In this document: piece by piece, positions 18,762 through 41,176 of the stretch
Layout: each line of letters starts with the position of its first letter
Position numbering within the stretch: the stretch's first letter is position 1
Translations under genes and position numbers: made by a program
The notes under the pieces: generated by a model
What the model saw: the letters and a program-made list of their open reading frames with translations, nothing else
Databases searched by the model: none
Told to the model about the DNA's origin: nothing
Source of the DNA: Hypanus sabinus
Taxonomy: Eukaryota
Length of the DNA stretch: 64,000 nt
Direction: 5' to 3'
NCBI RefSeq assembly: GCF_030144855.1
Contig: NC_082708.1
Coordinates: 133,300,001 to 133,364,000, forward strand

Positions 18762-18926
18762 ATGTCACGTTATAGATACTTCATATTTAACCAGCGTGGT
18801 ATGATTCCACTGGGAATTCTGCAGATAGCTTGTTCTACTGTCTGTGTGGTGTGTGGCTTCATAGATGGATCAGTGAGGAAGGATTCGGTACTTCGCCGGA
18901 CTAGAATACCCATCTGGACGGGCATG
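18762..18926 (+). CDS. Uncharacterised four-TM CD20/MS4A-like protein, coding exon 1
   Basis: gcaATGtca; MSRYRYFIFNQRGMIPLGILQIACSTVCVVCGFIDGSVRKDSVLRRTRIPIWTGM|gtaaac, phase 0; LGxLQI and PxWxG motifs. Confidence 0.85.
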
Positions 18927-19008
18927 GTAAACCTAAATGATTTAAATCTCTTTAATGTGCTTTTATATTTATTCATTAAACTAATGGTATATTTGCTTGC
19001 TGTTTCAG

Positions 19009-19068
19009 GTTATGGCATTTCCAGGAGTTTTGGCATTATTTTCTGCTCAGAAAAAAAGTCCCATTCTT
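19009..19068 (+). CDS. Uncharacterised four-TM protein, coding exon 2
   Basis: tttcag|GTT...CTT|gtaagt; VMAFPGVLALFSAQKKSPIL, phase 0/0. Confidence 0.85.
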
Positions 19069-19734
19069 GTAAGTCACTTGCATCTAATACTACCTTTGTA
19101 TCAGGAAAAATAATCTAACTGGTTTATTAAATGAAATGTGTCTAACAAGTAGCACTTATTTTGGCTAAGGGGGTCGGGTGACTTGATCATTTGATCTTTG
19201 TGCATAGCCAGTTAAGAGTTTTGTCTTTCTCCTGGTCTAAAATTTCTAAACCCCATGAACTGAGCATATTTAGGAGGGATCAGCTGATACTTTTCCCAAA
19301 TATGGTAACAGATTTGTCAAGTACTTGGTTGGTCTTGAGGTAGGTTCAAAGTAGACTATAATACTGTTTTGTAAAGTTCATTTTTGGAATCTTAAACAAA
19401 AGCTCAGGCAATGCCAGTTTCATGCAGTCATTTTGTGGTTGCCTTCAGAGAATTAAGATAATATCTTGCTGTGGATTAAGTCATATTACGCATCTTTACT
19501 GAAACACCAGGGTCAGTCTTGAATATATAATGCTCTCCAGAATAGTTTCCTATGTTCTGAAGTATGGGAAGCCCACTTAATAGCATTAAGAAATATTATG
19601 TGTGAGTATTGACCAGAAGAGCCTGTCTTGTCGCTTTGTGCATTGCACATGTATATGTACATCAGTGACATTGTCAAGATCTTCCAAGACTGGTAAAAGA
19701 AATGTGGAAAAATTCAAGACTGAAGAAGCTTGCT

Positions 19735-20635
19735 TACCATCTATATCAACAACCTGGATGATATTGTAGTAAACTGGATTAGCTCCCTTGCAGATGACAC
19801 CAAGTTTTTGGGTGTAGTGGACAGCAAGGAAGACTATTAAAGCTTGTAGTGGAATCTGGACCAGCTGGAAAAATGGGCTGAAAATGGCAGATTGACTTTA
19901 ATGCAGAAAAGTGTCATATGTTCCACTTCGGGAGGGCAAACCAGAATAGGACTTACCCAGTGATTAGTAGCACACTGCGGAGTGCAGTATAACAGAAGGA
20001 TCAGGGAATACAGATCCATAATCTTTGAAAGTGGCCTCACAGGTAGATAGATTGTAAGAAGAGCTTTTGGCACATTGGCCATCATAAATCAAAGTACTGC
20101 AACAGGGAGTTGGGATGTTATGTTGAAATTATATAAGACATTGGTGAGACCTAATTTGGAGTATTGTCTGCAATTTTGATCATCTACCTATTTCATTAAG
20201 AGTGCAGAGCATATTTACAAGGATGTTGCCAGAACCTGAGCTGAGTTGTAGGGAAATTTTGAATAGTTTAGGACTTTATTCCCTAATGTATAGGAAAATG
20301 AGGATAGATATGATGGAGGGGTATAGGTAGGGTAAATACAAACAGCCTTTTTCCACTGAGGTTGGATGAGACTAAAACTAGAGGCCACGGGTTAATGATG
20401 AAATGTAAAATGTTTGAGGGGGACAGGAGGGGGATCTTTTTCAGTCAGAAGGTTGTGAGAGTATGGAACAAACTGAGCAGAAATGCTGAATGTGGGTTCA
20501 ATTACAGTATTTAAGAAAAAATTGAATAGGTACTTGGATAGGAGTGGTATGGAGAATTGTGGTCGATGGAATTAGGCAGAATAAAAGTTTGGTATTGACT
20601 AGATGGACTGAAGGACGTGTTTCTGTGATTTCTAA
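19735..20635 (+). mobile_element. CR1 LINE 3' fragment
   Basis: Degraded RT C-terminus (ADDTK, LVRPNLEYCLQF) and CR1-type 3' tail. Confidence 0.8.
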
Positions 20636-21011
20636 TATGGGTGTGACAGTTTTCAATTGCTTTCCCATGCACTTTCAAGTGTCATTACATGTGTGTTAAA
20701 TAAACTTCAATACTTAGTATGAGCCTGAAGTAATTCTAAATTTTTATTTCAGCAAAAAGTAAAATGCCAGACAAACATTTGTGTAATTTGTAAACAGCAT
20801 ACGCAAGATGATACTCGAGGCAATGAAACAAATCTCTTTACGAATGCTATTGAATCACAAACAATGTGGTAAATTCAGAATGGAAGTGACATTCTCGTAT
20901 GCTGTGAATCAATCCCTGTCTAACTATATTTCCGTGACCGCCTACTAAAGCAAAACTAACAGGAAAAGCCAAGTGAATAAGTTTCACAAAGATTGGTTTT
21001 AATATCAGTAC

Positions 21012-21296
21012 AGTAGGTCGCAGTTAGCATGACACTATTGCAGCTTAACGTTCACCGTTCAATCCCAGCGTTTTCTGTAAGGAGTCTCCCCATAGGAAGT
21101 AAGTGTTTTCTCCGGGTGCTCCAGTTTCCTCCCACAGTCCAAAGATGTACCGGTTAGTAGGTTACTTGGTCATAGTAAATTGTCCCGTGATTAGGCTAGA
21201 GTAAATCGGGGCTGGCAGGGGTTGTGGGGTGGCACAGCTCAAAGGACTAGAAGGGCCTATTCTGCGCTGTATCTCTAAATAATAAATAAAAAAAAT
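21012..21296 (+). mobile_element. V-SINE / HE1-like tRNA-derived SINE
   Basis: GTTCAATCCC B-box; V-domain-like TCCGGGTGCTCCAGTTTCCTCCCACAGTCCAAAGA; tail ending (AAT)n/A-rich. Confidence 0.7.
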
Positions 21297-21402
21297 CAAA
21301 TGCCAGCTCTGTATTAAAACCGTCAATAATGTAATGCTATTTAGTGGTGTTTGAATTTGTTACACTATTTCATTATCACATTATTATACATTCTACGTTT
21401 AG

Positions 21403-21540
21403 GTGCATGCTATGGTTGGATCAGCTATACTATCTTGGTTAACCACAACTGTTTTAATAATATATGCGGCATTGACATTGAGTTATGGTGAAGATGATGA
21501 TGAAGTGTTCCAACATAAACCCAGCGATGTCATACACATG
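21403..21540 (+). CDS. Uncharacterised four-TM protein, coding exon 3
   Basis: tttag|GTG...ATG|gtaagc; VHAMVGSAILSWLTTTVLIIYAALTLSYGEDDDEVFQHKPSDVIHM, phase 0/0. Confidence 0.85.
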
Positions 21541-22059
21541 GTAAGCTTTTTTGAATTTCTTTTTATTGCGGTGTTTTTTCTCTGCTGATCACAAGCTTCA
21601 AAACTCTGTGATGTTCAAACGTATTAAATGATTGTGTGCCATTATTTTCCTATGCAAAACACTGTTAGGTAGGGAATTTCTACATTGCACAACAATGCAA
21701 AACTTATAATCAGTCTAGCTGTGGAGTTGCATAAAAGAATGATATGCAAAAACTGGAGGAGAAGACTTCCTGAAGTTTCGGGGGTGGAAAAAAAAAGGAC
21801 AAGAAATTTTAGTTTACCCATTTTATATTTTTCATTATTTTCTTACGACTTATAAAGTTGACAACCCCCTTTTTTGTTTAAACCCCAAGGAAGTCCATTT
21901 AGAAACATGCCAAATGTGCAATCTTCATGCAGACTGCACATTTTAATGCTTGTAGTCTTTTGTTTTCTGTTTAAATGAAACACTGTTGATGATTTTGGCC
22001 ACTTTCTTAGATTTTTTTTTGGATGAGATTGAAGAGAACTAATTGCCTGTCTTCGAAGG

Positions 22060-24150
22060 CAACGCGAGTGAATCTGCAGATGCTGGAAATAAATAAAAAC
22101 ACAAAATGCTGGCAGAACTCAGCAGGCCAGACAGCATCTATGGGAGAAGGTAGTGACGGCATTTTGGGCCGAAACCCTTCATCAGGAGTGAAGTAACATA
22201 GGATGATCGAAGAAGTGGGGGGAGGGATGAAGTAGAGAGCTGCGAAGTGATAGGCTGAAGGGAAATGGGCTGGGGGAAGGTGGAGAATTAAGGGAAATAA
22301 AAGAGAAAGAAAGGTAGGGCTGGGGGGAGATTATGGGGGGGGAAGGAGAGAGAAAAAGAATTGCTGGAGGACAGAGCGCCGGTGTTCGGCGAAACAGTCT
22401 CCCAGTCTGTGGCGGGTCTTGCCAATGTATAAATGGCCACATCGGGAGCATCGGATACAGTATATCACCCCAGTTGACTCGCAGGTGAAGTGGTGCCTCA
22501 CCTGAAAGGACTGTCTGGGGCCTAGGATGGTGGTGAGGGAAGAAGTGCGGGGGCAGGTGTAGCACTTCTTCCGTCTGCAGGGATGAGAGCCCGGAGGGAG
22601 GTTGGTGGGGAGGGATGGGGGGGATGAATGGACAAGGGAGTCATGTAGGGAACGATCCCTGCGGAAAGCTGAGAGGGGGGAGGAGGGAAAGATGTGTTTG
22701 GTGGTGGGATCCCGTAGGAGGTGGCGGAAGTTACGGAGGATTATACGTTGGATCTGTAGGCTGGTAGGGTGATAGGTGAGGACCAGGGGGACTCTATCCC
22801 TGGTGGGCTGGTGGGGGGATGGGGTAAGGGCAGAGGTGCGTGAAATACGGGAGACACGATGGAGGGCAGAGTTGATAGTGGACAAAGGGAAGCCCCTTTC
22901 TTTAAAAAAGGAAGACATCTCCTTTGTCCTAGAATGAAAGGCCTCATCCTGAGAGCAGATGCGGTGGAGGTGGAGGAATTGAGAGGAAGGGGTAGCATTT
23001 TTGCAGGAGACAGGGTGGGAGGAGGAATAGTCTAGGTAGCTGTGAGAGTCTGTAGGTTTGTAGTAGACGTCGGTGGATAGGCAGTCTCCAGAGATAGAAA
23101 CAGAGAGATCTAGAAAGGGGAGGGAGGTGTCAGAAATAGACCAGGTGAATTTGAGGGCAGGGTGAAAGTTGGAGGCGAAGTTAATGAAGTCGACGAGCTC
23201 AGCATGTGTGCAGGAAGCAGCACCGATGCAGTCGTTGATATAATGCAAGAAAAGAGGAGGACAGATACCGGTGTAGGCTTGGAACATAGATTGCTCCACG
23301 TGGCCGACAAAACGGCAGGCATAGCTAGGACCCATGTAGGTGCCCATGGCTACACCTTTAGTTTGGAGGAAGTGGGAGGAGCCAAAGAAGAAATTGTTAA
23401 GGGTGAGGACTAATTCCGCGAGGCAGAGAAGAGTGGTGGTAGAGGGTGACTGGCTGGGTCTGGAATCCAGGAAGAAACGGAGAGCTTGGAGACCCTGGTG
23501 GGAGATAGAGGTGTATAGGGACTGGACGTCCATGGTGAAAATGAGGCGGTGGGGGCCAGGGAACTTGAAATCTTTGAAGAGATGTAAAGCATGGGAAGTA
23601 TCACGGACATAGGTGGGAAGGGATTGAACAAGGGGAGATAAAACAGAGTCGAGATAGGCAGAAATGAGTTCAGTGAGGCAGGAGCAAGCAGAGACAATGG
23701 GTCTGCCTGAACAGACAGGTTTGTGAATCTTGGGTAGGAGGTAGAAACGGAAGTGCGGGGTGTGTGAACTATACGTTTGGTGGCCGTGGATGGGAGATCT
23801 CCTGAGCTGATGAAATCGGAAATGGTTTGGGAGACAATGGACTGGTGCTCCCTAGTGGGGTAATGTTCCAGGGGTAGATAAGGGGAGGTGTCAGTGAGTT
23901 GTCGTCTTGCCTCCGCTATGTACAGGTCAGTGCGCCAGACGACAACAGCACCCCCCCCCCCCCCCCCTTATCAGTGGGTTTGATGATAAGGTTGGGATTG
24001 TTGCAGAGAGAATGGAGAGCAGAGCGTTCAGAGGGGTTAGAATTCGAGCAAGGGGTGATGAAGTCGAGATGGTTAATGTCCCGATGGCAATTAGAGATAA
24101 ACGGATCCAGGGCGGGTAGTTCTGGGCGGGGAGTCCATGAGGAGGAGGAG
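22060..24150 (-). mobile_element. Penelope-like retroelement (RT plus GIY-YIG endonuclease), 5'-truncated and inactive
   Basis: ORF 22331-23533: MDVQSLYTSI, QTKGVAMGTYMGPSYA, YIND (YIDD mutated), GVIYCIRCSRCGHLYIGKT (GIY-YIG); pyrimidine-rich 3'UTR and terminal hammerhead-like motif 22150-22190. Confidence 0.92.
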
Positions 24151-26154: not shown

Positions 26155-26626
26155 AGAAACATAGAAAACCTACAGCACAATACAGGCCCTTTGGCCCACA
26201 AAGCTGTGCCAAACATGTCCTTACCTTGGAAATTACCTAGGGTTACCCATAACCCTCTATTTTTCTGAGCTCCATGTACCTGTCCAGGAGCTTCTTAAAA
26301 GACCCTATCGTATCCACCTCCACCACTGTCGCTGTCAGTCCATTCCACACACTGTGTAAAAAGAAAACTTACTCTTGACATCTCCTCTGTACCAACTTCC
26401 AAACACCTTAAAACTGTGCCCTCTCATACTAGCCATTCCAGCCCTGGGAAAAGCCTCTGACTATCCACACAATCAATGCCTCTCATCATCTTTTCACCCC
26501 TATCAGGTCACCTCTCATCCTCTGTAGCTCCAGGGAAAAAAGGCCAAGTTCACTCAACCTATTCTCATAAGGCATGCTCCCCAATCTGGGCAACATCCTT
26601 GTAAATCTCTTCTGCACCCTTTCTAT
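26155..26626 (-). mobile_element. CR1 LINE 3' part (host element interrupted by the ERV)
   Basis: CR1 3' tail; sequence continues seamlessly at 32560 after the CTAT duplication. Confidence 0.85.
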
Positions 26627-27075
26627 TGTCAAACGTTCCTTCTAATTATTACCCGTTACCCGATGCAAGAACAGACAGTACTACAGAAGGTAAAGCAACT
26701 GCTTTTTTTATTAGTAGCTTGCTACTGGAGAGAGCTCTCTCTAGGCCCACAGCAGCCCGTTCCGAGGGTCTCCCTACCCGCACACAGATACAGAGTCTTT
26801 TTTATACCCTTTCTGCCATGCAGCAGGAAACAATTTTCTGGCTACCCCTACAGTCATATGCCCAGCAACAATGGTATTTTAATACAAAGGCCCTTTGGTT
26901 GCCTTAATAGGCCAAAGGTCATCAACCACAGACAATGTGCATGATGAGATCATCTCTCGTAGTTCTTTTGTACGGTATTACCATATTGCATTCTGCAGGT
27001 GCACAAGCCAGCAGAGCTTAGCTTGAAATCTAATTTTTACCTGTCAGCAGAACAAATTAACCCTTTACTACCTCA
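26627..27075 (-). repeat. ERV 3' LTR (449 bp)
   Basis: Direct repeat of 32104-32559 (about 19 substitutions and 2 indels by eye); minus-strand TATAAA near 26806 and AATAAA near 26712; preceded by PPT AAAAAGGAGGGAA (27076-27088). Confidence 0.95.
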
Positions 27076-27103
27076 TTCCCTCCTTTTTATCATATGATAA
27101 CAA

Positions 27104-28470
27104 TTAAATTGGGGCTGAAAACAGTGCCGCTAATTTGGTAGGGAAAGCCTTGCAGCACGTGTTTAAACAGGTCAACAGTACACAACACACAATGATAATC
27201 ACAACAAGAATGACTAACCCATGTAGGAAATAAGAGGCCCATGATCCCCCTAGCAACTAGCTGAGCCACCCTTCTCCTCCCGGCAGACCCTTGCCTAAAA
27301 CTATCTAACTGAATCTGAATTTTCTGAATCTCTAGAATCGCGTACGAGATGTTATGGGACTCGTCCCTGACATGGGTGTTGCACTTATCTCCAACTATGG
27401 CACACACCCCTCCCTGCTGGGCTAACTGGTAGTCCACAACATACCGGGTCTGCAGAGCGTAAAGTCGAAGTTCTGCCATTTCTTGGTTGATTGCCTCCAT
27501 TGTGCTGTTCCCCAATGCTGTCAGCCCACAGACGAGGTAGTTTCGATTCCCAGCTATGGCCCCTGCAGATCCGCCGAGGGAGAAAGTGCTGAGCCAGCCT
27601 TAGCCCACCGCCGATCCCAGAGTGGTCAGGTCCTTATAATCCGCACATAATTCCTTACTGATGGATCAAGCCACCAGTCGTCGTCAAACGGGAGCTTCCT
27701 GCAGGCCAGGAACGGTGATCGTTCCAACGGCGAATGGTGGAGGCAGAGCATTAGGACCCGTAGTGTAAGAGGAACACGTATCCGCTCTTTGCCCAGTAGC
27801 ATGTGGAACTGTCAGAAAATGTTTTCTGATACCAGATATTTTCAGCACGGTATATTGGGGCGAAAGCCAGCTGACATTTTCCCTCTAGAAACGTGGGTCC
27901 CATTACAATGACCACACACGTACTGATTCCCTTCGGGTAGGACAACACACCTTTCTCGAGTACAGGTACATGAAAACTTACTGCTTTTTATTCCACAATC
28001 ATGATTCAGACAGTGCCTTTCAATGCTGGGGATGTTCTTAGGGACTTTAACAATTACACACACCCATCCTATTCCTCGGAAATAGAAAGGGCAGCCGTGG
28101 GTGCCCCTACAGATAGTTCCATTTCCAGACTGTCATTCTGTTGCCTCTGTGCGTTTAGCCAGGACTGAGTTCCCCAGCTCTTGGATCACCCATTCTCAGA
28201 ACTCCACCCTAAAGTGCTGTTCAAACTTTCCACACACTGTCCCATACTCGCTCTTGTAAACCTTCCCTTATCACCTTTACGCTCTCTGCCTGACGTATCC
28301 TCTTCCACTAACTCCTCCCAATTCCTTTCAGTTGGGTTAGCCACGAATAGTGCCTCTACAAGGGGTAACATACAGTTCTGTTACCATATAATTGCATATG
28401 CATTTCATAAAAGAGATTACTTTCCAAAGCATCTGTAAATACATAAAGAGTCCAAGTCCAACAACAATCG
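27104..28470 (-). pseudogene. env: ERV env (SU plus TM) with stops and frameshifts
   Basis: SNLFYEMHMQLYGNRTVCYP N-terminus; TM LC...LVCGLTALGNST...LQTRYVVDYQLAQQGGVCAIVGDKC; anchor LHGLVILVVIIIVCCVLLTC after a frameshift. Confidence 0.9.
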
Positions 28471-28471
28471 C

Positions 28472-28551
28472 TAGTCCTGACGAAGGGTCTCGGCCCGAAA
28501 CCACGGATGCTGCCCGACTTGCTGAGTTCCTCCAACGTGTTTGTACGTGTT
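28472..28551 (+). mobile_element. Penelope-derived 80-bp insert inside the ERV at the pol/env boundary
   Basis: AGTC-CTGACGA-A-GGGTCTCGGCCC-GAAA; TSD AACAATC(G/A)C at 28463-71 and 28552-60. Confidence 0.8.
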
Positions 28552-28556
28552 AACAA

Positions 28557-30162
28557 TCACGTTTCGTCCGGCGACCCTCGCTTATAATCACTCAGGTGAA
28601 TCCAACGGTTGTGACCTTGTACTTTTACTGCAGTCGGCATCTGGAGAAGGATCTGAAAAGGTCCTTTCCACCGGGGTCCAAGCTTGGGGTGCTCCCAATC
28701 CCTTACCAGTACCGAATCCCCAACTTTCAAATCCGGACACTCCGCTTCTGGTTTTTCCTGTGGTTTAAATGCCTCCTGCACCTGAGAATGAAGGAACTTT
28801 AGAGAGGATGTTAACTGCCTGAAATACCTTTGCAATTCACCCCCCCCCCCCATAACATTAAGGTCAACTTGGGTGGGAGGCTGTGTATTGACATCCCACG
28901 GGGTCCTTCCGGGACGTCCATAAATAATTTCAGCCGCTGATACTGTGGTAGTGGAATGGGGAGGAATCATCATATGATACAAAGCTAACAGAAGGACCTT
29001 CAGCCAGTTCAGTCCAGTTTCAGACATTAACTTAGCCAGCTTATTTTTCAAGGTGCCGTTAGCCCATTCCACTATTCCTGCAGCCTTCGGGTGCTGGACA
29101 CAGTGGAATCGCTGTTGAATGTGCAGCACCTCGCATAGTTCTTTATTTATTTTTCCCACAACATGAGGACAATTGTGCGAACTTGTCTGTCTGGGTAAGC
29201 CGAATCTTGGTATAATCTCTGTAAGTAACACCCTTACCACCATGGAGGCTTTATTATTGGTGGTCAGAAAGGCTTCAGTCCATCTGCTAAGCACATCTAC
29301 AATCACTAAACAATACCTATAACAGTGTACACGCGGTAGTTCGATAAAATCAAGCTGAATAAATTCAAAAGGACCCCTTGGCAAGGGGATTTTTCCTCGG
29401 GCACACTTTATTCCTCTTCCCGCATTTATTTGTTGGCATATCAGACATGATCGTATTTTCTCTTGTGCCGCCTCTTCCAATCTAGGGTGCCACCAGGTGC
29501 GTAGTAAAATGTTACTCATTCCCTCCTTGCCAAGATGCGTATCAGTATGCAGGCAATCAATAAGCATTGGTAACAAAGCATCAGGTATACAAACTTGGCC
29601 AACTGGTGTGAGCCAGAGGCTCTCGGACGCAGAGTGCAAACACCCATGTGACTTCCAGATTAGTTTTTCTGAATCGGGGCGTCCCCCTGTAGTTGTCCAT
29701 GTCTGGAAAACCCTTTGCTGTTGTGGTTGGCCAGCAGGCCAAGGCCAATTTCTCTGCCGTGGAGACAATATAAATGGCAGTCTGTGCCGCTAATTTGGCT
29801 TCTCTGTCCGCCCGATGATTACCTTGGGTAACGAGAGGAGTCGGAGAGATGCGCTGAGCACTTAATTGTTTTGAAAGGAGGATGGCACTGAGGAGGTTCT
29901 TTATGTATGAGGCATTCTGGATAGGGGTCCCTGTGGAAGCGAGGAATCCTCGATGGGCCTATAGCTGGCCGAAGTCATGAGCCAGCCCAAAAGCGTAACG
30001 GGAGTCAGTAAAAATATTGGCCACTTCATCCTTGGTCAATATACAGGCTCTTGTCAAGGCAAATAGTTCTGCCCTTTGTGCTGAGACAGGAGGTGGTAAG
30101 GATGCTGACTCGACCACAGCCGAGTCATTCACAATGGCGTAGCTACTAAGGCGGGTTCCAGT
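28557..30162 (-). pseudogene. pol: ERV pol remnant: RNase H plus integrase
   Basis: SAQRAELFALTRAC, NIFTDSRYAFG (RNase H); H-x3-H...C-x2-C, QLDF, SSHNCPH (second catalytic D changed to H), GIVE, WKGPF (integrase ORF 28557-29768). Confidence 0.93.
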
Positions 30163-31601
30163 AAAAAAAAGAGTGCTCGCTTCATCTGGGGTCACCAGTT
30201 ATCCGACTAGTTCATATTGTTGGTCCTAATGGCAGCATCAATATTCTCAGGGATACATTGCACAAGAATAGCATTAAACTGGGGCGAGAGATTACCAGCA
30301 TTAAAGGCGGTATCCCCGGCATAGGTTGCATAGGTGGAGCAGAAACGGTCCTAAAAGTCAGTACCGTCTTTTCTTTCCTTAGGTTTACATTCTAAGACTT
30401 TGCTCATGTCAACAAGCTGATGCAGGGTCGTCTTAAGGGCTCGTTTAATCTTGTCTACCTGTTCTGTTGGGTCTGGGTTCACTGTCAAAAATGCCTGCCA
30501 ATTATTGTGATTATTTAGTCCCTGATACCATTTAGTCTGTTCATCCTGAGTGAGGGCCGTACAGCACAGACTGAAAAGATCTTGGAGAGTAGCCTGATAC
30601 ACTTGAATGATGCTTATTATATAGCGTATAAAATCGTCCAGATTCGTTTTATGGTTAGGTGCGGTGCTCATCATCATGCGCATTTCATGAGCTTTCCATG
30701 GGGTATAAATGCGCAGAGTGGGTTCATCGGCGTTCCCGTGGGGATCGGGGCAATTCCGGTCAGGAGTAAACGTGGAGTGTGTGCATCCGGGGCCACAGTT
30801 TCAAAGGGGTCATTTTCATCACACTCCTCATCAGGGTCAATCAAAGGGCAGTCCCCCTATTAAACTGTTTCTCTTGAGAATTGCATTTTTGCGTTTCGGC
30901 CGCGGGGTAGATTTTTTTCAGTGGCTTCAGTTCCAGCTGCAACGGGATCACTAAATTGTTCTGGCCCATGTCTCCGCTCCCGTTCCTGAGCTGTGTAAGG
31001 AGGTGATGGTTGGGATGCCTGCTTGCTGAAGGAGTGGAGGGTAAACTGGGGCCGTGGGGCGAACTAGTCAATCCTCCTCAGTTTCATCTGTATCATCAGT
31101 CTCATTTTGGAACAACATCGGTAAACCAGACTTGTCCGGAGGTACCTCCATTTTACCCTGGTAATTAACAACCTCACGTCCCCGTCCAGTTCCTTCTCCT
31201 GTTTTTTCCCTCCTTTTCTGTCCTTTATCATGCTCCTCGCTGTTACTTCAACACTTCCCATGGCTTGGGTTTGCCTTCCCTATCACATACACTAATCCCT
31301 CTTCTAGATGCATTGTGTTCCCAACTACTTTGTCTAGACTTATTGGTTAATTCCTCGGCCGTTTTTCTCCATGTTGACATTAAGATTTTCCATTTCCCCC
31401 CTGAATTCCGCTTCCACATTGTCTTTTCTGCATTAATGAATTTCTGCACATTTCAGGTTCCCCCTAATGGCCACGTTCCATTTCCAGTTTCTTATTTAAT
31501 GAGTCAGATAATTTACAAAAATCATTTCCGTCCCTGGGAGTCTCCTTACAAATTTTGAACAAGGGGGTATCCGTTCCTGACTTATCAAGGGTCTGACCCA
31601 T
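30163..31601 (-). pseudogene. gag: ERV gag remnant (MA, Pro-rich region, CA); NC absent
   Basis: ATG at 31601 gives MGQTLDK (myristoylation-type MG start); WPLGGT MA motif; MHR-like KVLECKPKERKDGTDF*DRF; several frameshifts. Confidence 0.85.
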
Positions 31602-32082
31602 TTTCCTTTAATCCGTTAATTTTGTGCTGTGCCTCTCTGCACCCACTTCAGGGTACTGACCTTCACATGGGGGATTTTCCCTCTTAACAACCGGTCTAAG
31701 GCAGGGTGTCTGAGACAGGCAGATTATTGTAAACTCACTGTAGTGAATCCTCTAACTATTATCCCAGTGAATCCTCTAACTGTTATCTGGGACGAATCCT
31801 CAATCCCACACTTCTTGTACCTGGGCGAATCCTCAACCCCACTTTTTTAACACCTGGGCGAATCCTCAAGCCCCCCTCCAACCCCTTCTTACCGTAGTAC
31901 TCGGGCAACCTTAATGATTCTTCAGGAGTCTGTCCAAGGAATGCCCGTAGACGAAGGGGTCGACAAGGTACACAACTAATGAGAGAGATCAAGGTAAATC
32001 TTACCTTGTGGACCCATCTGTCTCGGGTCGTTGCCACCGAGCCGATCACTGATGCCGCCTCACGGAGCTGCCTCGTCTTGGA

Positions 32083-32100
32083 CTCCTGGTTGGCTCATCA
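32083..32100 (-). promoter_or_regulatory. ERV primer-binding site, tRNA-Arg(ACG)
   Basis: Minus strand TGATGAGCCAACCAGGAG, 15/18 to TGGCGAGCCAGCCAGGAG, 3 nt downstream of the 5' LTR. Confidence 0.8.
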
Positions 32101-32103
32101 AAT

Positions 32104-32559
32104 TGTCAAACGTTCCTTCTAATTATTACCCGTTACCGGATGCAAGAACACTCAGTACTACGGAAGATAAAGCAACTGCTTTTTTTATTAGAAGCTTGCT
32201 ACTGGAGAGAGCTCTCTCTAGGCCCACAGCAGCCCGTTCCGAGGGTCTCCCTACCCGCACACAGATACAGAGACTTTTTTTATACCCTTTCTGCCACGTA
32301 GCAGGAAACAATTTTCTGGCTACCCCCACAGTCATATGCCCAGCAACAGTGGTATTTTAAGACAAAGACCCTTTGGTTGCCTTAATAGGCCAAAGGTCAT
32401 CAACCACAGACAATATGCATGATGAGTTCATCTCTCGTAGCTCCACATTTTTTGTACGGTATTACCGTATTGCGTTCTGCAGGTGCACAAGCCAGCAGAG
32501 CTTAGCTTGAAATCTAATTTTTACCTGTCAGCAGAACAAATTAACCCTTTACTATCTCA
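32104..32559 (-). repeat. ERV 5' LTR (456 bp)
   Basis: Direct repeat of 26627-27075, TG...CA ends. Confidence 0.95.
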
Positions 32560-34155: not shown

Positions 34156-34339
34156 ATATTATTGGATTATTGGATGTTATTCCAACAAAATTTTAATTCT
34201 CTTTTTGAAAATGTTACACAGTATTATAATAAATGTCTCCAGTGAATTGGGTAAATTTAAAGGCAGTGTGGGTATTGTGGTTCTGATGAGTTTGAAAAGG
34301 GTGTGGAAAACTTTGTTTAGGAGCCAGATGTTGGATCAG

Positions 34340-35010: not shown

Positions 35011-35269
35011 TGAATCAGTGGGTTTTCTGTAATTATCAGATTTTACAGTAAATAGACAATTTTATTTAATATTTCTTACTTTGATGAGAGGGAGACTCTC
35101 ATTACTAGGTCAGGGAGACTAAAATTGTACACAATACTCTGGGTATGTTTTTTGCAAAATGTTCTATGATTACGGCAGAATTCTTTCATATGTTATTTAC
35201 CTTATTAATTGCTTGTTATATCTGGCTGTTAATTACTAAAAGAACAACACCTCTTATCCTCTCTGGTTA

Positions 35270-35820
35270 GCATACAACCCAACAGCATGAACATTGAATT
35301 CTACAGTTTCAGGTAACTTGCTGTCCCTGCCTCTTTCTCTCACCTTCTGATCTACCCAAGTCATCCTACACACACCGCACTCCTACTATGTAGTTTCTTT
35401 CCAACTCCTCCACCTACTCCATCATCCACACAATTGCCCACTGCATTCCTACCCCCCCCAACTGTCCCCATCTCCCCACCTTTTCTTAGTGATTTGGTTC
35501 CACACTCCACTGTCCTTTCCCATCATTATGCATCATCTGTAGCCGAGTTGTCTTCACCTACTTCGCAGCCTCTGTTGTTATCTTCACCCTTCCCTCCACC
35601 ACCTGACTTCATTTGCGTATAGCCCCTCCTTACCTGAATCTGCCTATCAGTTACCAGTTTTTTCCCCACTCCTTCACCTTACTTACTTACTTTATACCAG
35701 CCATTGCCCCTCTAATATTTCAGTCCCGATGAAGGGTCTCAATCTGAAACATCGACTGTCTGTGTATGCTGCATCCCTACTAGTTTTACACCTGGTTCGA
35801 TCACCTGCAGTCTTGTGTCT
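35270..35820 (+). mobile_element. Penelope 3' fragment
   Basis: QPNSMNIEFYSFR* ORF end, pyrimidine tract, CAGTC-CCGATGA...GAAA-CATC-GACTG at 35721-35758. Confidence 0.7.
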
Positions 35821-36125
35821 GCTAGGTATTAATTTTCTGATTTCTATGTGAGTTATCTTGTTTTCAGATAGTCATTGTTATTTCTTGTCATTGCTCTTCC
35901 CAAGTGGGCAGAATACCCAGTGAGCCTGATGCCTTCTCCCCTGAAGTCACATGGAATAATTTCCAAAGATAGCTGTCTAAACATTAAGTAGGACCATGGC
36001 TGGTCACTTAGCCTGCAATTGCTTGCCAAATGAATATAGAACATGGGTCTTCAGTCTGAGAATTTTACCAGTATCCTGTTCTTTTACCAAAATTGGAGAT
36101 GAAATGCATATCTCTTTCATTGCAG

Positions 36126-36272
36126 GAATATTTACTCAGTAGACTTGTTCAAGGAGTCAATATGACTATACTACTGGCATCTGTGGTTGGTATTCTGATG
36201 ACAACCATCCTAGTGTATCTTGGTTGTAGAAGCCTCCCCATCTGTGGCTGTTTTGACAATACAACTGGAATG
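36126..36272 (+). CDS. Uncharacterised four-TM protein, coding exon 4
   Basis: ttgcag|GAA...ATG|gtaagt; EYLLSRLVQGVNMTILLASVVGILMTTILVYLGCRSLPICGCFDNTTGM, phase 0/0. Confidence 0.85.
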
Positions 36273-37500
36273 GTAAGTTTATTGCTCAGTCATAGTTCTC
36301 CAAATTGTTGTTCCTCTGTGTGTTGTGGCCCATCAGGCAGCAACCTTGCAGTTTCTTTAGTATTTGTTTTTATTTTATGAGACCGAGTTAATAGCTCGAC
36401 ACTCAATCCTGCATGGATGGGACGTGTGCAAGGTGCCGGCCAGATTTGAACTCAGGACCACTCACCTTGAAGCCTAGTGTGGATACCTTAACACCACCAG
36501 CCAGCTAGTTATCAAAATTACTTGTGTTTATTTAAAATGGCTTGTTGTGCTCTGAATGATAAATCCAAGAATGCATACTAGTTAATTTCTTTCATGTTCT
36601 AATCTACAAATTGAATAATTTAAAAGTATTATTTGGTTATTCAACAGCAGGACATCAAAATGCATTTCAGCTTTGTAGTCCTTGTACAATGTCTTTGCAG
36701 ACATTTCCAGCAATGATTGGTATGGGCAATGCTGACAGACTTTAATAGATTAAGTTTACTCTAGTCAGTCATGGTTCTAATCTTATTTGCCATATCCCTT
36801 TAAAACCCTTGTAGATATTGTCATCCAACTTGATAAGCACCTTCAAAATATTTATTTGATGTAATGCCGTTTCTTAGCTTTTTCAGAAAATATGAATTTT
36901 AACTTTATAGGTGTTTTCACACCAAATCAAGTTTCAAAATGAGTAGGTTATCCAAGTGCAAAAGTATTTAAAATCTCTTACTCGTTTGGGCAACAATAAT
37001 TAAAGCAAATTTATGAGAAAATGCTTTGTGTAATGAACACCTGAGATGGGAGAACGCCAAAGTGCTGAAGGTCATTAAAAGTGCATGAAGAGGACAAGTG
37101 TGCTGAGTCTACGGTAGGGAGATGGGGCAATTGAATGTTCAACTAGATATCGGACATTTTGAGAAAGGGCTGCTGTGGCACAACTGGTTCCATAACCACC
37201 TTTTGTGCTGCAAAATTCCATGAATTTCTCAGCACTGAAATCTTAAAGCAAACCTCACACCTGAATCCCATGCTCTGACCTGGTCTTAAATAGAAACAAA
37301 AACTGCTGGAAAGATTGAGCCACATCTGCTTGAACACACAATTATCTTTTCAGATTGATGACCACTGAAAATAGAAAAGAAAGGCATTTTGGTGGTGTGG
37401 AGTGGTATGCAAGGATAGTGATCAGTATGAATTTTTGAAGGTAATGAAATAACTTGGCTATGTTCCTGAGGAAAGCAAAAGAGGGACTTCTACTGATACT

Positions 37501-38235
37501 CAACATTCCCACTAAAGTGTGTGTGTGCATACATCTTTTGCTATTAGAGCACAAAGGAATTTAAACTGCACACAAATGGTTGTCGCCCTCTACCTTGTTG
37601 GCATGTTAAGTATATTTCGCACTCATACACAATCACATTTCCTTTTCCAGTTTCTGATGCAGACGGTGTTGACAACATGGAGTTTATGATGATTTGTCTG
37701 CAGATTTTAGAACTGTCTTATATCTACTATTTTTATTGAAGAAATTATTAATTCACTATGCCAAATTCCAAAGAAGCAACGCGCGTGAAGCGCAAAAGAA
37801 CTGCTTGTTCATTTAAGGCAAAATGGCTTAATGGAACAGTAGAAACTGCAATACTGAAAGCTCATAAGCTACGAGAAAAATTTATGTACAATACAGAAAC
37901 TGGTATTCCCTGTGTGCATTGTTACGATGCAAAAGTTGCTGGAGAATTTGCAAGTGGGAAGAAGTGGAATGATATTTTGAAACTAATTAGCAAGCAAATC
38001 ACATATGGATGGTATGCAAAACCTCCAGCAGGAAAATCCTTCATTACATGTCACAGGCCTGCTACATATGTTTTGTGAGAGTCCACATGAACATGAGAGG
38101 AAAAGATCAAACGCAGAGGAGATCAAAGTTCTTATTGACAGTGTAGTAACAGTGCACACGTTGTCACTGGGCAAAAAAATGGCACAGTACAAGATTTATG
38201 CACGCACTGGTCATTACAAATTAGAGGGAACATTG
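37501..38235 (+). mobile_element. Non-autonomous hAT (Tip100/ZNF862-like) element
   Basis: TIR CAACATTCCCACTAA / TTAGAGGGAACATTG; 8-bp TSD CTGATACT / CTGGTACT; N-terminal transposase remnant with FxxxW and CxxC (37758-38078). Confidence 0.75.
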
Positions 38236-38441
38236 CTGGTACTATGAGTTTTGTTTCTCCCCCTCAACTATTACTGCCAAGAGCAGTATTCTAGTGATTT
38301 ATTTACTTTGCCTTTGGGATCTTTGACTGTGACATTGATCAGTTGAATTGACTGAATATGAGCTGAGTGATTACTGTATAAATGCAACTTCTGTTTTGTA
38401 ATGGGACAAATCAGACTGAATAATAGCATTTCTCATTGCAG

Positions 38442-38502
38442 CAGCCATTGATGACAGAAGACCATCAACCTCAGATGATTGAGTTAATCAGTGTCCGGAA
38501 AA
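38442..38502 (+). CDS. Uncharacterised four-TM protein, coding exon 5
   Basis: ttgcag|CAG (NAGNAG acceptor)...AA|gtaagt; QPLMTEDHQPQMIELISVRK, phase 0/1. Confidence 0.65.
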
Positions 38503-38859
38503 GTAAGTTTATAAATCTATTAATGGATCAAACACTAGTGTTGACATTTACAGTAGGTCTTTTGACAGGTAAAATGTGTTCATGCCTCATTTATGTTTTC
38601 ATTTAAACTTGCATTCCTATGATGAATCCCTGTCCCAACCATTCCACATAAAGCATGATTGCCCCTCATTTCACCACCTTAGAAGTTTACTGTTCCAGCC
38701 ACCACAAGTTCATTATGGCTGCGATGTGCGTGTGATCATCATGGTAACTTACTAAGACCTCTGTGGAGGACAATGGGAATGGTACTGAAGACTGTGCCAC
38801 AAACTAATTTGCAGAGATAATCTCAAGTAGCAAGTTTTAATATGATTAGAAAGTGGTTG

Positions 38860-39230
38860 GGAAACTCAGCAGATCAGACAGCATCAATAGAAAGGAATAA
38901 AAGGTCGATGTTTAGGGCAGACACATCAATCAGGACTGGAAATGAAGGGAGAAGTGTCAACTCTTTATTCCTTTCCATAAATGCTGCCTGACCTGCTGAG
39001 TTCCTCCAGCATTTTGTATGTGTTACTCTGAATTCCTACCATCTGCAGAATCTCTGTGTTTAGAAAATATTAGGAGTACTTGGCAGATCAGGCCATATCT
39101 GTGGGAGAAACAGAAACGGAACTTTACTCAGAACGTGGTTTTAATGAAGGGTCTTTGAACTGGAACATAAACTTTGTTTCCTTTCTCACACAATCTGCCT
39201 GACCTGATGCATATTTTCAGCATTTTCTTT
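38860..39230. mobile_element. Two adjacent inverted-repeat Penelope-derived inserts
   Basis: Each is a minus plus plus copy of the CTGCCTGACCTG(C/A)TG-containing terminus. Confidence 0.6.
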
Positions 39231-40359
39231 TTGTTTTTATTTTATTCAAGAGCCATCTCAGGCACAATTCTTTTGCCTGGTGAGATTCCGCAATTGAAGT
39301 TGAATTAAGGAATTACTGTCCAGTGGGGTTTACCATGTATTAATCTAATTCTATTAAAGTGAATATTTAATAGGAAGCATCTTTTGCTACCTCTGTGTTT
39401 GTTTTATAAACCCAGTGGCAAGATTGGATAAATGTCTTTATCTGCTATACCTTGTTCTGCTTGCCCTGAAATCCAATATTGTTTGCTGGGGCTCTTGACT
39501 TAGACCTGCAGAACCATTGTTAAGCATCTCAGATTAACAGATTACCAGTGTAGTTCAAAATAATTGGCTCCCACTTGCTAACTAATTTTTCAGAAAGTTT
39601 GAAATCCAGACATTTGATGGGATTTTGTCCTACCTCTGTCCAATGATTAATTTGGATATGGGCTCCTGGGCACCAGCTCAGATGTGATCAAGAGCTAATG
39701 GGGTTCAATTCTACAATCGTGAAGGATTGAACTAATCAATCAACCTCTGCCATTCTGGTGTAGTGTTTCTGTTTCCCATAAACCTTTGCATACTTTAGTA
39801 TCTAAATAGCCTGCTCTAATATTAAGATAACACTTTCTTCTTGTAGATTCCAACATTAGATATAGTTTTTGTTGATCAACCCAAATCTCCTGTATCACTT
39901 TGAAGACCTGAACTGCATCACTCTGTCAGCCTTGTATATGCAAGTGTACAGAACACACTGCCTTGGGTGACGGTAGGGGCAGATACATTAGGGGCACTTA
40001 AGAGAGTTTTGGATAGGCACATGGATGAAAGAGAAAAAATAATCGAGGACTTTGTGGGAGGGGAGGGTTAGATTGATCTTGAAGTAGGTTAAAAGGTCAG
40101 CACAACATTGCGACCGAAGGGCCTGAACTGTGCTGTACTTGCAACAGAAAGCAAGTTTATGCCACTTGTCCTTGGTGATCAATGAGTGAAGCTTTACAAT
40201 AGTTTTCTGTTCCAGCCAATGCAGGTAAAGGCCAGATCCTTTACTTTTTTGATTCAGAACTATAGCGTTGCTGATGGTTAAAATTGCTGTATCATTTCTG
40301 AGAGCAATTAAGTTCATATTCATTTAGGAGGGCAAAAAAATGCTGGCGCTACCTGTGAT

Positions 40360-40710
40360 CCTGGGTCTGTGTGGATGTGGAGAGGATGTTTCATATGGTG
40401 TGGGTATCCAGAACTACAGGGCACAGCCTCAAAATTGAGAGGCAACCTTTTAGAATGGAGGTAAGGAATTTTTTTTTGCCATAGAATGGTGAATCTGTGG
40501 AGTGCTCTGCCACAGTCTGCGATGGAGGCCAAGTCCATAGGTATATTTAAGGCGGAAGTTAATTCCTCATCAGTCTGGGCATCAAAGGATATGACGAGAA
40601 GGCAGGTGTATGGGAGTGAGTGGGTTCTGGGATCAACCATGATGGAATGGCAGAGCAGACTCGATGGGTTCAATGGCCTAATTCTGCTCTCATGTCTTTA
40701 TTGGTCTTTT
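40360..40710 (+). mobile_element. CR1 LINE 3' end
   Basis: RMVNLWSALPQSAMEAKSIGIFK and CR1-type tail. Confidence 0.7.
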
Positions 40711-41063
40711 GAAGAAAAATCCCTTTTTGTGCAATCTCTGTTCTCACCCTTAAGAACATTTCTTAACTGTGTACAAATTGGCTGATCTCCTTACTTTATC
40801 ATATTTTCTGCCAGAGAGAACCTAATTGATTGGGTAGATCTATGACTGGCTATTTCAGTCCTGTTACTTGCATTATGATCTGGACAGAGCAATTTACCAG
40901 AGATCATTGGTTGGTATCAGTTATCCATTGGCTATACAGTGGAATCTTTTTAGGCAATGTATTTGGCAGAGCTATCCATGCTAATTTAATTGAGGCATTC
41001 TTTGCATAATTATTAATATGCTTCTACCTTTACTAACTTGATATGAATTTCTCTTAAAACAAG

Positions 41064-41176
41064 ATGGCAGTGCTCAGCGAATCCTAAATGATCCAGTACT
41101 GAATGATGGGAATGGAGAGAAAGAAGAGGCAGAGCTGATGTCAAAGTCAACAGCACCCTACATGCTATTTACTTAA
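41064..41176 (+). CDS. Uncharacterised four-TM protein, probable last coding exon
   Basis: aacaag|AT...TAA; phase-1 join gives NGSAQRILNDPVLNDGNGEKEEAELMSKSTAPYMLFT*; acceptor is weak. Confidence 0.55.

What the first reader, a model, noticed from the sequence alone, without database searches (positions are those of the whole stretch)
18762..41176. Uncharacterised 227-aa CD20/MS4A-like tetraspan gene between SETD7 and RAB33B
Seen: six GT-AG exons (18762-18926, 19009-19068, 21403-21540, 36126-36272, 38442-38502, 41064-41176) join in frame without stops. They encode four hydrophobic segments, LGILQI and PIWTG motifs, an acidic second loop (YGEDDDE), a juxtamembrane Cys cluster (GCRSLPICGC) and a terminal YxxPhi (YMLF). 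The ORF track shows only fragments of it. Known: LGxxQI and PxWG-like motifs mark the CD20/MS4A/TMEM176 superfamily, and human SETD7 and RAB33B have no coding gene between them. Inference: an old vertebrate membrane protein, possibly palmitoylated and endosomally sorted, lost in the lineage leading to humans.
Basis: partly seen in the sequence, partly recalled or inferred. Interest (0 to 1): 0.72.

Follow-up and report, generated by a model that had tools for sequence, protein, structure and literature searches.

The report
Stingray CD20-like gene zgc:113425 orthologue
The six exons are a real, correctly spliced gene for a small four-helix membrane protein of the CD20 family; it is already predicted in public databases but unstudied, occurs from sharks to birds, and is apparently missing in mammals.

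Summary
Six GT-AG exons on the + strand join into a 227-codon frame. The product is 227/227 identical to RefSeq XP_059821172.1, "uncharacterized protein zgc:113425 isoform X2" of the Atlantic stingray Hypanus sabinus. The gene model is therefore not new.

It is a CD20-like tetraspan: Pfam PF04103 at 75.9 bits, and the best fold matches are FcεRI β, CD20 and a chain of the dystrophin-glycoprotein complex. It lies between the 3' ends of SETD7 (+) and RAB33B (-). The same triple occurs in manta ray, red stingray and a teleost, and two birds have SETD7 directly upstream. Skate RNA-derived contigs carry the same spliced CDS with identical exon sizes.

Orthologues span cartilaginous fishes, ray-finned fishes, coelacanth, lungfish, amphibians, reptiles and birds. 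No mammal appears among the listed hits. The membrane core is under purifying selection (dN/dS about 0.15-0.2).

The family's C-terminus is PPPYxRL, a PPxY motif overlapping YxxΦ. Rays keep only YxxΦ.

Most likely role, by inference: an accessory tetraspan whose tail controls endocytic sorting or turnover. Function is untested.

The parts
15191..15269 (+). Putative 5' non-coding first exon with the promoter region nearby (inferred, not shown by RNA from this species)
   Evidence: 77.5% identical (E 1e-10) to the first non-coding exon of little-skate transcripts, including a (GA)n run. A GT donor follows 15269. CpG observed/expected is 0.56-0.82 at 15.0-15.75 kb, against 0-0.3 in most other 500-nt windows of 14-19 kb.
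18670..18926 (+). First coding exon: 92 nt of 5'UTR (18670-18761), then the ATG at 18762 and codons 1-55 (N-terminal RYRYFIFNQ peptide, TM1 with LGILQI, basic loop 1, PIWTG)
   Evidence: A pyrimidine tract plus AG lies at 18668-18669. Bases 18670-18715 are 82.6% identical to the skate 5'UTR starting exactly at the skate acceptor. The coding part alone hits Pfam CD20 at 30.4 bits. GT donor.
19009..19068 (+). Coding exon 2, codons 56-75 (TM2 and the short QKKSP loop)
   Evidence: AG/GT boundaries, phase 0. The same 60-nt exon occurs in skate, and an intron falls at the same protein position in eagle and crow.
21403..21540 (+). Coding exon 3, codons 76-121 (TM3 and the acidic loop YGEDDDE)
   Evidence: AG/GT boundaries, phase 0. 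The same 138-nt exon occurs in skate. Y103, G104 and E105 are (near-)invariant.
36126..36272 (+). Coding exon 4, codons 122-170 (TM4 and the juxtamembrane GCRSLPxCxC-D cluster)
   Evidence: AG/GT boundaries, phase 0. The same 147-nt exon occurs in skate, eagle and tetra. G154, C155, R156, L158 and C161 are 90% or more conserved, and S157, P159, C163 and D165 are invariant.
38442..38502 (+). Coding exon 5 (61 nt, ends in phase 1). A tandem acceptor 15 nt upstream (38427) would add HFSLQ.
   Evidence: The 5-residue insertion is present in the 232-aa isoform X1 of Hemitrygon, and the same letters lie upstream of the acceptor here.
40327..40464 (+). Alternative terminal exon of predicted isoform X1 (235 aa, P0243); its tail is not conserved
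   Evidence: tblastn with the X1 tail. Acceptor tttag|GA and stop TAA at 40462-40464. The tail ending is unique among 160 family members.
41064..41176 (+). Last coding exon: disordered acidic tail, terminal APYMLFT (YxxΦ), stop TAA at 41174-41176
   Evidence: Y223 is invariant and P222 is 90% or more conserved. YxxΦ lies in the last 12 residues of 154 of 160 family members.
41177..41806 (+). Probable 3'UTR (extent uncertain)
   Evidence: Bases 41688-41777 are 74% identical to the skate 3'UTR. AATAAA at 41735 and 41801.
10252..11974 (+). Upstream neighbour: the last two coding exons of SETD7 (about 10252-10416 and about 11792-11974, including the stop)
   Evidence: NHSFTPNC and TVDYGYDH motifs. 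E 4.9e-27 to solved SETD7 chains, aligned to their C-terminus.
44140..54415 (-). Downstream neighbour, convergent: RAB33B. Exon 2 lies inside ORF 44140-44619 and exon 1 inside ORF 53987-54415. hAT transposon remnants sit in its intron.
   Evidence: Pfam Ras 2e-32 and 2.4e-15. E 2.4e-71 to Rab-33B chains.

Best explanation
This is the Atlantic stingray orthologue of zebrafish zgc:113425. It is a single-copy, expressed gene for a 227-residue tetraspan of the CD20-like superfamily, conserved across jawed vertebrates. It sits at a fixed address, downstream of SETD7 and tail-to-tail with RAB33B.

Shown: the gene model, the orthology, the synteny, the CD20-like four-helix fold, and purifying selection on the membrane core.

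Inferred mechanism: like its structural relatives FcεRI β, CD20 and sarcospan, it is probably not an enzyme. It most likely works as an accessory or scaffolding subunit that packs through its helix bundle against itself or against other membrane proteins. Both termini would then face the cytosol, by analogy with CD20. On the outer side, a conserved basic loop 1 and a conserved acidic helical extension (YGEDDDE) would sit next to each other. Three conserved cysteines after TM4 (C155, C161, C163) are candidate S-acylation sites that would pin the start of the tail to the membrane. The disordered tail carries conserved short motifs and ends in a tyrosine signal. That signal would bind clathrin adaptors (YxxΦ) and, in most vertebrates, NEDD4-type ubiquitin ligases (PPxY or LPxY). 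The tail would thus set the endocytosis and turnover of the protein and of whatever it is bound to. In rays the PPxY half has decayed, so only the YxxΦ half can act.
For: Identity: the spliced product equals XP_059821172.1 at 227/227 residues. It is 96% identical to the 227-aa isoform of Hemitrygon (8 differences), 88.5% to Mobula, 74% to skates, about 70% to sharks, 63% to Callorhinchus and about 42-55% to bony vertebrates, over the full length.

Expression and splicing: at least 10 short contigs from at least 5 sequencing runs of little skate hold the uninterrupted 684-nt CDS. They map to the skate genome as coding exons of 165/60/138/147/61/113 nt, the same sizes as here. A largemouth-bass contig holds an uninterrupted 222-codon CDS. 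The intron positions recovered in eagle, crow and tetra fall at the same places.

Synteny: SETD7(+), then the gene(+), then Rab(-) in Astyanax, Mobula and Hemitrygon. In eagle and crow SETD7(+) lies 8 kb upstream.

Fold: Pfam CD20 E 4.9e-21, covering profile positions 2-156 of 156. In the AF2 model the helices have pLDDT mostly 83-95, the two connecting loops 60-78, and the tail below 50. Foldseek top hits are FcεRI β (TM 0.74, rmsd 3.6 Å), CD20 (0.69) and a chain of the dystrophin-glycoprotein complex that I take to be sarcospan (0.61).

Constraint: dN/dS against skate is 0.27-0.32 overall and 0.15-0.20 for residues 1-165. There are 28 invariant columns across 42 species, including R5, Y6, F9, N10, P50, W52, E105, S157, P159, C163, D165 and Y223.

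Tail motif census: YxxΦ in 154 of 160 members, strict PPxY in 89, and about 19 more with LPPY by my count from the tail list. An overlapping PY/YxxΦ signal controls the turnover of another four-helix membrane protein, connexin 43 (PMC3771946).
Against: No experiment on any member was found: no paper in the library mentions zgc:113425 or XB5734924 in its main text. No partner protein is known. Loop 1 is strongly basic (5 K/R), which by the positive-inside rule fits poorly with an outward-facing loop, so the CD20-like orientation is assumed, not shown. In the stingray-skate pair the tail (61 codons) evolves at dN/dS of about 1, and rays have lost the PPxY prolines. The tail may therefore matter less in this lineage than elsewhere. 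Palmitoylation, adaptor binding and ligase binding are all motif-based guesses. Sequence similarity to any studied relative is marginal (E 0.011 to FcεRI β).
Confidence: 0.5

Rival explanations
1. It is itself an ion-conducting protein, a cation channel or channel component as has been proposed for TMEM176B, CD20 and MS4A12. The conserved acidic outer loop would attract cations, and polar residues inside the helices (Q21, N133) would line a path.
For: It is a member of the same superfamily. The acidic stretch YGEDDDE is conserved, and Q21 (90% or more) and N133 (invariant) are conserved polar residues in TM1 and TM4. Papers in the library describe TMEM176B as an intracellular cation channel and MS4A12 as linked to Ca2+ entry (abstracts listed).
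Against: A single four-helix bundle has no pore, and the model shows a tight bundle. From general knowledge, the CD20 cryo-EM structures (6vja, 6y90, both among the hits) showed a compact dimer without an obvious pore. The conserved sorting-type tail and Cys cluster are not explained by a channel role.
Confidence: 0.15
2. It is a ligand-sensing receptor, like the MS4A chemoreceptors of mouse olfactory necklace neurons, with the outer loop 2 as the binding site.
For: Same superfamily. Loop 2 is the largest exposed element.
Against: The gene is single-copy in nearly all species, and the gene tree follows the species tree. The outer loop is among the most conserved parts, rather than diversified as expected for a chemoreceptor repertoire. 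There are no tandem arrays at the locus.
Confidence: 0.05
3. It is an annotation artefact or a decaying pseudogene in the stingray: a chance open frame, or a gene that is no longer used.
For: The tail shows dN/dS of about 1 against skate, and the PPxY motif is lost in rays. No RNA data from this species could be examined (one search found nothing on record).
Against: The frame is intact, and all splice sites are canonical. The core has dN/dS of 0.15-0.2. There are only 8 substitutions against Hemitrygon and 26 against Mobula, with no indels. Skate transcripts have the same structure. The terminal Tyr and the Φ position are kept even in rays.
Confidence: 0.02

Closest known systems
zgc:113425 orthologous group (zebrafish zgc:113425; Xenopus XB5734924; 'uncharacterized protein LOC...' in birds and reptiles)
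   Same: This gene is a member. It is identical to the RefSeq Hypanus sabinus model. It aligns over the full length, and it shares the six coding exons, the SETD7/RAB33B neighbourhood and the Pfam CD20 assignment.
   Different: Rays have replaced the consensus C-terminal PPPYIRLA by xAPY(M/V)(L/Q)F or ASYMLL. The gene is stretched to about 22-26 kb by transposon and retroelement insertions, against 3-4 kb in tetra and eagle.
FcεRI β chain (MS4A2)
   Same: It is the closest solved structure (TM-score 0.72-0.74, rmsd 3.3-3.7 Å) and the only family found by sequence in the PDB (E 0.011 with the single sequence, 8.6e-4 with the profile). It has the same TM1 LGxxQI-type and TM2 PxWG-type motifs. 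It works as an accessory subunit of a receptor complex, which is the model adopted here.
   Different: Only 17-19% identity. There is no ITAM, because the tail has a single Tyr. The N-terminus is much shorter. The genomic location differs.
CD20 (MS4A1)
   Same: Same Pfam family and four-helix fold (TM-score 0.69). The largest outer loop lies between TM3 and TM4.
   Different: About 15% identity. Loop 2 is short, acidic, helical and free of cysteine, whereas CD20 has a long disulphide-bonded loop (general knowledge). The tail carries PPxY/YxxΦ and a Cys cluster.
Sarcospan and TMEM176A/B (other CD20-like tetraspans)
   Same: The third structural neighbour is a chain of the dystrophin-glycoprotein complex (9c3c_n, TM-score 0.61) that I take to be sarcospan; the hit table names only the complex. 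Sarcospan is again a non-enzymatic accessory subunit of a membrane complex. TMEM176 proteins are endomembrane CD20-like proteins (abstracts).
   Different: No detectable pairwise sequence similarity was found in the searches run. TMEM176 could not be compared directly because no reference sequence was on hand.
Overlapping PY/YxxΦ turnover signals (connexin 43 SPPGYKLV; ENaC PPPxYxxL from general knowledge)
   Same: The family consensus PPPY(I/V)R(L/M/F) has the same layout: one Tyr serves both a WW-domain ligand and a clathrin-adaptor signal in the cytosolic tail of a four-helix membrane protein (PMC3771946).
   Different: This is an analogy of a short motif only, with no homology. In the stingray protein the PPxY half is not met (TAPY).

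Membership tests
CD20-like family (Pfam PF04103) | Profile score above the curated gathering cut-off, over the whole domain | tested here: met
   75.9 bits against 27.9, E 4.9e-21, residues 17-155 on profile positions 2-156 of 156. Exon 1 alone scores 30.4 bits.
CD20-like family (Pfam PF04103) | Four transmembrane helices in a compact bundle, with a fold match to solved members | tested here: met
   AF2 helices 11-38, 49-69, 73-110 and 116-157, with helix pLDDT mostly 83-95. Foldseek: FcεRI β TM 0.74, CD20 0.69. Four hydrophobic peaks.
CD20-like family (Pfam PF04103) | Both termini cytosolic | not testable with these tools
   Assumed by analogy. The basic loop 1 (5 K/R) is at odds with a simple positive-inside reading.
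zgc:113425 orthologous group | Full-length best matches, shared exon structure and shared gene neighbourhood | tested here: met
   Identical to XP_059821172.1. Exon sizes are identical in skate. Recovered intron positions are the same in birds and a teleost. SETD7 and Rab33B are neighbours here and in other species.
MS4A subfamily proper (MS4A1-MS4A18) | Clear sequence similarity to MS4A members | tested here: inconclusive
   There are only marginal hits to FcεRI β (E 0.011 and 8.6e-4) and none to CD20 by sequence. The exhaustive exon-1 search found orthologues only, plus three spurious repeat proteins.
MS4A subfamily proper (MS4A1-MS4A18) | Residence in the tandem MS4A gene cluster | tested here: not met
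   It is a single gene between SETD7 and RAB33B in every locus examined. That MS4A genes are clustered is taken from PMC2826416 and general knowledge.
FcεRI β-type signalling subunit | Cytoplasmic ITAM (two spaced YxxL/I) | tested here: not met
   The tail holds a single Tyr, Y223.
PPxY-bearing NEDD4-ligase adaptors or substrates | A cytosolic [PL]PxY motif | tested here: not met
   The stingray tail ends TAPYMLFT. The motif is met in the family at large: strict PPxY in 89 of 160 members, plus about 19 LPPY by my count from that list. WW-domain binding is not testable here.
Tyrosine-based (YxxΦ) sorting signals | YxxΦ in an accessible cytosolic segment | tested here: met
   YMLF at 223-226 lies in a segment with pLDDT below 50. 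YxxΦ is present in 154 of 160 members. Adaptor binding and the orientation of the tail are not testable here.
S-acylated tetraspans | Conserved cysteines at the cytosolic membrane boundary | tested here: met
   C155 and C161 are 90% or more conserved and C163 is invariant, directly after TM4. The modification itself is not testable here.
TMEM176 family | Sequence similarity to TMEM176A/B | not tested
   No TMEM176 reference sequence was available from the tools. None appeared in any search.

The most novel reading that the evidence does not exclude
zgc:113425 proteins form a separate, ancient branch of the CD20 superfamily. They would act as a membrane-embedded trafficking and degradation adaptor. 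The helix bundle would hold an as yet unknown partner, either a receptor or a channel. The palmitoylated, PPxY/YxxΦ-ended tail would deliver that partner to clathrin adaptors and NEDD4-type ligases. The gene would have been lost once in the mammalian stem, and its ligase-binding half would have been lost independently in rays.
Probability: 0.25. Interest if true: 0.5.

Novelty: already known. Interest (0 to 1): 0.3.

Why it matters
The result confirms that raw-sequence reading recovered a complete six-exon vertebrate gene exactly. Biologically, the gene belongs to the large set of conserved vertebrate genes that nobody has studied, partly because humans and mice seem to lack them. It is a single-copy relative of CD20 and FcεRI β with a fixed chromosomal address for over 400 million years (age from general knowledge of the shark-bony vertebrate split). 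It has an invariant N-terminal peptide, an acidic outer loop, a cysteine cluster and a turnover-type tail. It would be an easy knockout target in zebrafish or Xenopus, and it could show what a basal CD20-fold protein does outside the immune system. The 2010 survey of MS4A and TMEM176 genes reported none in elephant shark (PMC2826416). This family shows that the CD20 fold is present there (P0062).

Tried and rejected
- Pfam on exons 2-4 separately gave nothing, because the pieces are too short. NCBIfam gave nothing, as expected for a prokaryote-oriented library.
- Three long proteins hit by the exon-1 search (P0013, P0041, P0043) looked like possible multi-domain relatives. They are ankyrin, MucBP and other repeat proteins, so the hits are spurious.
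- Cluster look-ups of fragmentary exon-1 hits returned unnamed Logan/ENA contigs. By BLAST most sit next to snake, lizard, bird or teleost orthologues, some match only other unnamed contigs, and none could be assigned to a mammal.
- An exact-protein look-up of the stingray protein and of the Xenopus protein found nothing on record.
dN/dS against close relatives was therefore impossible, and skate was used instead.
- Literature searches for zgc:113425, XB5734924 and the run accessions found nothing relevant. The one hit was a PubMed-id coincidence.
- The third protein-database search was not spent. Only the best 120 hits are listed, and orthologues fill that list, so it could show neither weaker mammalian hits nor paralogues.
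- I rejected reading the TATAA 12 nt before the ATG as the promoter. Skate transcripts and an acceptor at 18669/18670 point to an upstream non-coding exon.

Full report
**Observation.** Each intron begins GT and ends AG, mostly behind a pyrimidine-rich tract. The exon lengths are 165, 60, 138, 147, 61 and 113 nt. Joined, they give 684 nt from ATG to TAA with no internal stop, which is 227 residues. A hydropathy scan gives four hydrophobic segments. The mechanical ORF list shows only two fragments of the gene. The window has no N.

**Identity.** Exon 1 alone (55 aa) passes the Pfam CD20 gathering score (30.4 against 27.9 bits). An exhaustive HMMER search of 1.84 billion representatives with exon 1 gave 44 hits, 38 of them below 1e-10. 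The named ones are "uncharacterized protein zgc:113425" from sharks and teleosts and "uncharacterized protein LOC..." from birds. The full spliced product aligns end to end with these. One member of the nearest cluster is identical at all 227 positions: XP_059821172.1, [quoted passage not shown]. XP_ accessions are computed models, by general knowledge. The 227-aa isoform of Hemitrygon akajei differs at 8 residues and Mobula at 26, without indels.

**Evidence that the model is transcribed and spliced as proposed.** No stingray RNA could be examined, and nothing is on record for the exact protein. The little skate orthologue (74% identical) is carried by a genomic locus and by at least ten 1.0-1.3 kb contigs, with five separate sequencing runs among the loci shown. 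Each contig holds the uninterrupted 684-nt CDS. Mapped on the skate genome, such a contig breaks into coding exons of 165/60/138/147/61/113 nt, the same as in the window. A largemouth-bass contig likewise holds an uninterrupted 222-codon CDS. The intron positions recovered in golden eagle, American crow and Mexican tetra fall at the same places in the protein.

**True extent of the gene.** Skate transcripts begin with a non-coding exon that starts in a (GA)n run. Some include a 65-nt repeat-derived cassette. They then enter the first coding exon 95 nt before the ATG. In the window, 18670-18715 matches that UTR at 82.6% and starts right after a pyrimidine tract plus AG (18668-18669). Bases 15191-15269 match the skate first exon at 77.5% (E 1e-10), contain the (GA)n run and are followed by GT. 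CpG observed/expected rises to 0.56-0.82 around 15.0-15.75 kb. The gene thus probably starts near 15.19 kb, about 3.2 kb past the SETD7 stop codon. This is inferred. Two predicted variants can also be placed. An alternative terminal exon at 40327-40464 gives the 235-aa isoform X1, whose tail is not conserved. A tandem acceptor 15 nt before exon 5 would add HFSLQ, as in Hemitrygon isoform X1.

**Neighbourhood.** On the + strand upstream lie the last two coding exons of SETD7, with E 4.9e-27 to solved SETD7 chains, aligned to their C-terminus. Downstream on the - strand lies RAB33B. Its exon 2 is in 44140-44619 and its exon 1 in 53987-54415. It scores E 2.4e-71 to Rab-33B, against 3e-30 for the next best Rab. 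The same order, SETD7(+), CD20-like(+), Rab(-), is recorded in Astyanax, Mobula birostris and Hemitrygon. In eagle and crow SETD7 lies 8 kb upstream on the same strand. A frog orthologue is even mis-named "SET domain containing 7" in UniRef.

**Family and fold.** The full protein matches Pfam CD20 over the entire profile (75.9 bits, E 4.9e-21), and so do orthologues from coelacanth, turtle, eagle and tetra. Sequence similarity to anything solved is marginal: FcεRI β at E 0.011, or 8.6e-4 with a 42-species profile, and no hit to CD20 itself. An AlphaFold2 model built on the 42-species alignment has four long helices with pLDDT mostly 83-95, connecting loops at 60-78, and a tail (162-227) below 50. 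Its best structural matches are FcεRI β (TM 0.72-0.74), CD20 (0.69) and a chain of the dystrophin-glycoprotein complex that I take to be sarcospan (0.61). The gene is a bona fide member of the CD20-like superfamily. It is not demonstrably a member of the MS4A subfamily. It lies outside any MS4A cluster and lacks the ITAM of MS4A2.

**Distribution.** A shark query returned 224 hits and a turtle query 290. The 120 best of each come from chimaera, sharks, rays, bichir, sturgeon and paddlefish, gar, bowfin, teleosts, coelacanth, lungfish, caecilians, salamanders, frogs, turtles, crocodilians, tuatara, lizards, snakes and birds. All but one carry PF04103. No mammal is listed, although with the turtle query amphibians (61-68% identity) and even sharks (56-58%) are. 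A mammalian orthologue under similar constraint should have ranked among them. This supports loss in the mammalian stem, or at least the absence of a conserved annotated copy. It does not prove loss, because the unlisted hits and mammalian genomes could not be inspected. That the human SETD7-RAB33B interval has no coding gene is my general knowledge, not a test. A maximum-likelihood tree of 42 orthologues follows the species tree: chondrichthyans, batoids, actinopterygians and tetrapods are each recovered, and only the lungfish is misplaced. This indicates a single-copy, vertically inherited gene.

**Constraint.** Across 42 species, 28 columns are invariant and 37 more are at least 90% conserved. 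The conserved elements are:
- the N-terminal peptide M-D-R-Y-R-Y-F-I-F-N-Q;
- G18 and Q21 in TM1;
- P50, W52 and G54 at the start of TM2;
- Y-G-E at the start of the acidic loop;
- N133 in TM4;
- G-C-R-S-L-P-x-C-x-C-(Y/F)-D right after TM4;
- T-G-M-x-x-L, E184, and N-x-P in the tail;
- P222 and Y223 at the end.

Against skate, dN/dS is 0.27-0.32 overall (dS about 0.5) and 0.15-0.20 for residues 1-165, but about 1 for the last 61 codons.

**The C-terminus.** In the family at large the ending is (K/R)PPPY(I/V)R(L/M/F)x, a PPxY motif that shares its Tyr with a YxxΦ signal. Of 160 full-length members, 154 have YxxΦ in the last 12 residues and 89 have strict PPxY; about 19 more have LPPY by my count from the tail list. 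Batoids have xAPY or ASY, and several sharks PAPY. The ligase-type half is therefore degenerate in this lineage, while the Tyr and the Φ position persist. The same overlapping layout (SPPGYKLV) controls endocytosis and Nedd4-dependent turnover of connexin 43, another four-helix membrane protein (PMC3771946).

**Mechanism (inferred).** The three closest structural relatives are non-enzymatic accessory subunits of membrane complexes. The most economical reading is that this protein is one too: a small oligomerising tetraspan that associates with other membrane proteins. The juxtamembrane cysteines are candidates for S-acylation. The disordered tail with conserved short motifs and a terminal tyrosine signal would govern its cycling and degradation. 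Rival readings are weaker. A stand-alone cation channel would fit the conserved acidic loop and the polar residues in the helices, but a single tight four-helix bundle offers no pore. A chemoreceptor is unlikely, because the gene is single-copy and the outer loop is among the most conserved parts. A decaying gene is contradicted by the intact frame and the constrained core. One unexplained point remains: loop 1 carries five basic residues, which is unusual for an outward-facing loop. It may pair with the acidic loop 2, or the orientation may differ from CD20.

**Known or new.** The gene model, its name and its Pfam assignment are already public, so the finding is already known as an annotation. 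No functional study was found in the searchable literature. The 2010 survey of MS4A and TMEM176 genes does not list it and reported no such genes in elephant shark, whereas this family is present there (P0062).
- the taxonomic pattern, all jawed-vertebrate classes except mammals;
- the conserved micro-synteny;
- the PPxY/YxxΦ tail and its decay in rays;
- the likely upstream non-coding exon.

**Other content of the interval.** The gene is 22-26 kb long here, against 3-4 kb in tetra and eagle, because of insertions. Intron 3 holds an LTR-flanked retrovirus-like element and a reverse-transcriptase-type ORF. The RAB33B intron holds hAT transposase remnants.

Noticed in passing
window 26625-32559 (- strand element, inside intron 3): A retrovirus-like LTR element. 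The direct repeats 26625-27075 and 32102-32559 are 95-97% identical and lie 5.48 kb apart. They flank a 403-codon ORF (28557-29768, -) with integrase zinc-finger, core and MLV-type C-terminal domains. It was only described; its other genes were not examined.
   Followed up: partly
window 22331-23533 (-), inside intron 3: A 400-codon ORF with no Pfam hit, in an unusually G+C-rich stretch with strong GC skew (GC 0.52, skew 0.43 at 22-24 kb). By eye its end looks like a GIY-YIG-type nuclease motif. That would suggest a Penelope-like retroelement, but this was not tested.
   Followed up: partly
window 45554-47342 (-), inside the RAB33B intron: Two ORFs carry a hAT dimerisation domain and DUF4371. 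They are remnants of a hAT DNA transposon.
   Followed up: partly
residues 166-227 of the protein (window exons 4-6); skate L006: Between stingray and skate the cytoplasmic tail evolves at dN/dS of about 1, with a low dS (0.25 against 0.56 in the core). Yet the tail holds motifs conserved across vertebrates. The sample is small (61 codons), and the pattern is not explained.
   Followed up: partly
residues 37-49 (window 18870-18908): Loop 1, expected to face outward by analogy with CD20, carries five Arg/Lys (conserved R39, R48). The other outward loop carries seven Asp/Glu. The two loops may pair, or the topology may be different.
   Followed up: no
database names of orthologues P0072 (Leptobrachium) and P0166 (Varanus): Two orthologues carry plainly wrong names in public sources: 'SET domain containing 7, histone lysine methyltransferase' and '50S ribosomal protein L23, chloroplastic'.
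   Followed up: no
L006-L010 (little skate transcript contigs), 5' ends: Skate 5'UTRs come in two forms, with and without a 65-nt cassette exon that resembles dispersed repeats elsewhere in the skate locus.
   Followed up: partly
window 62118-62450 (-): A 110-codon ORF has a weak GDSL-lipase-like hit below the cut-off (E 0.0038, 18 bits against 32.9). It is probably chance. The region beyond RAB33B (55-64 kb) was otherwise not resolved.
   Followed up: no
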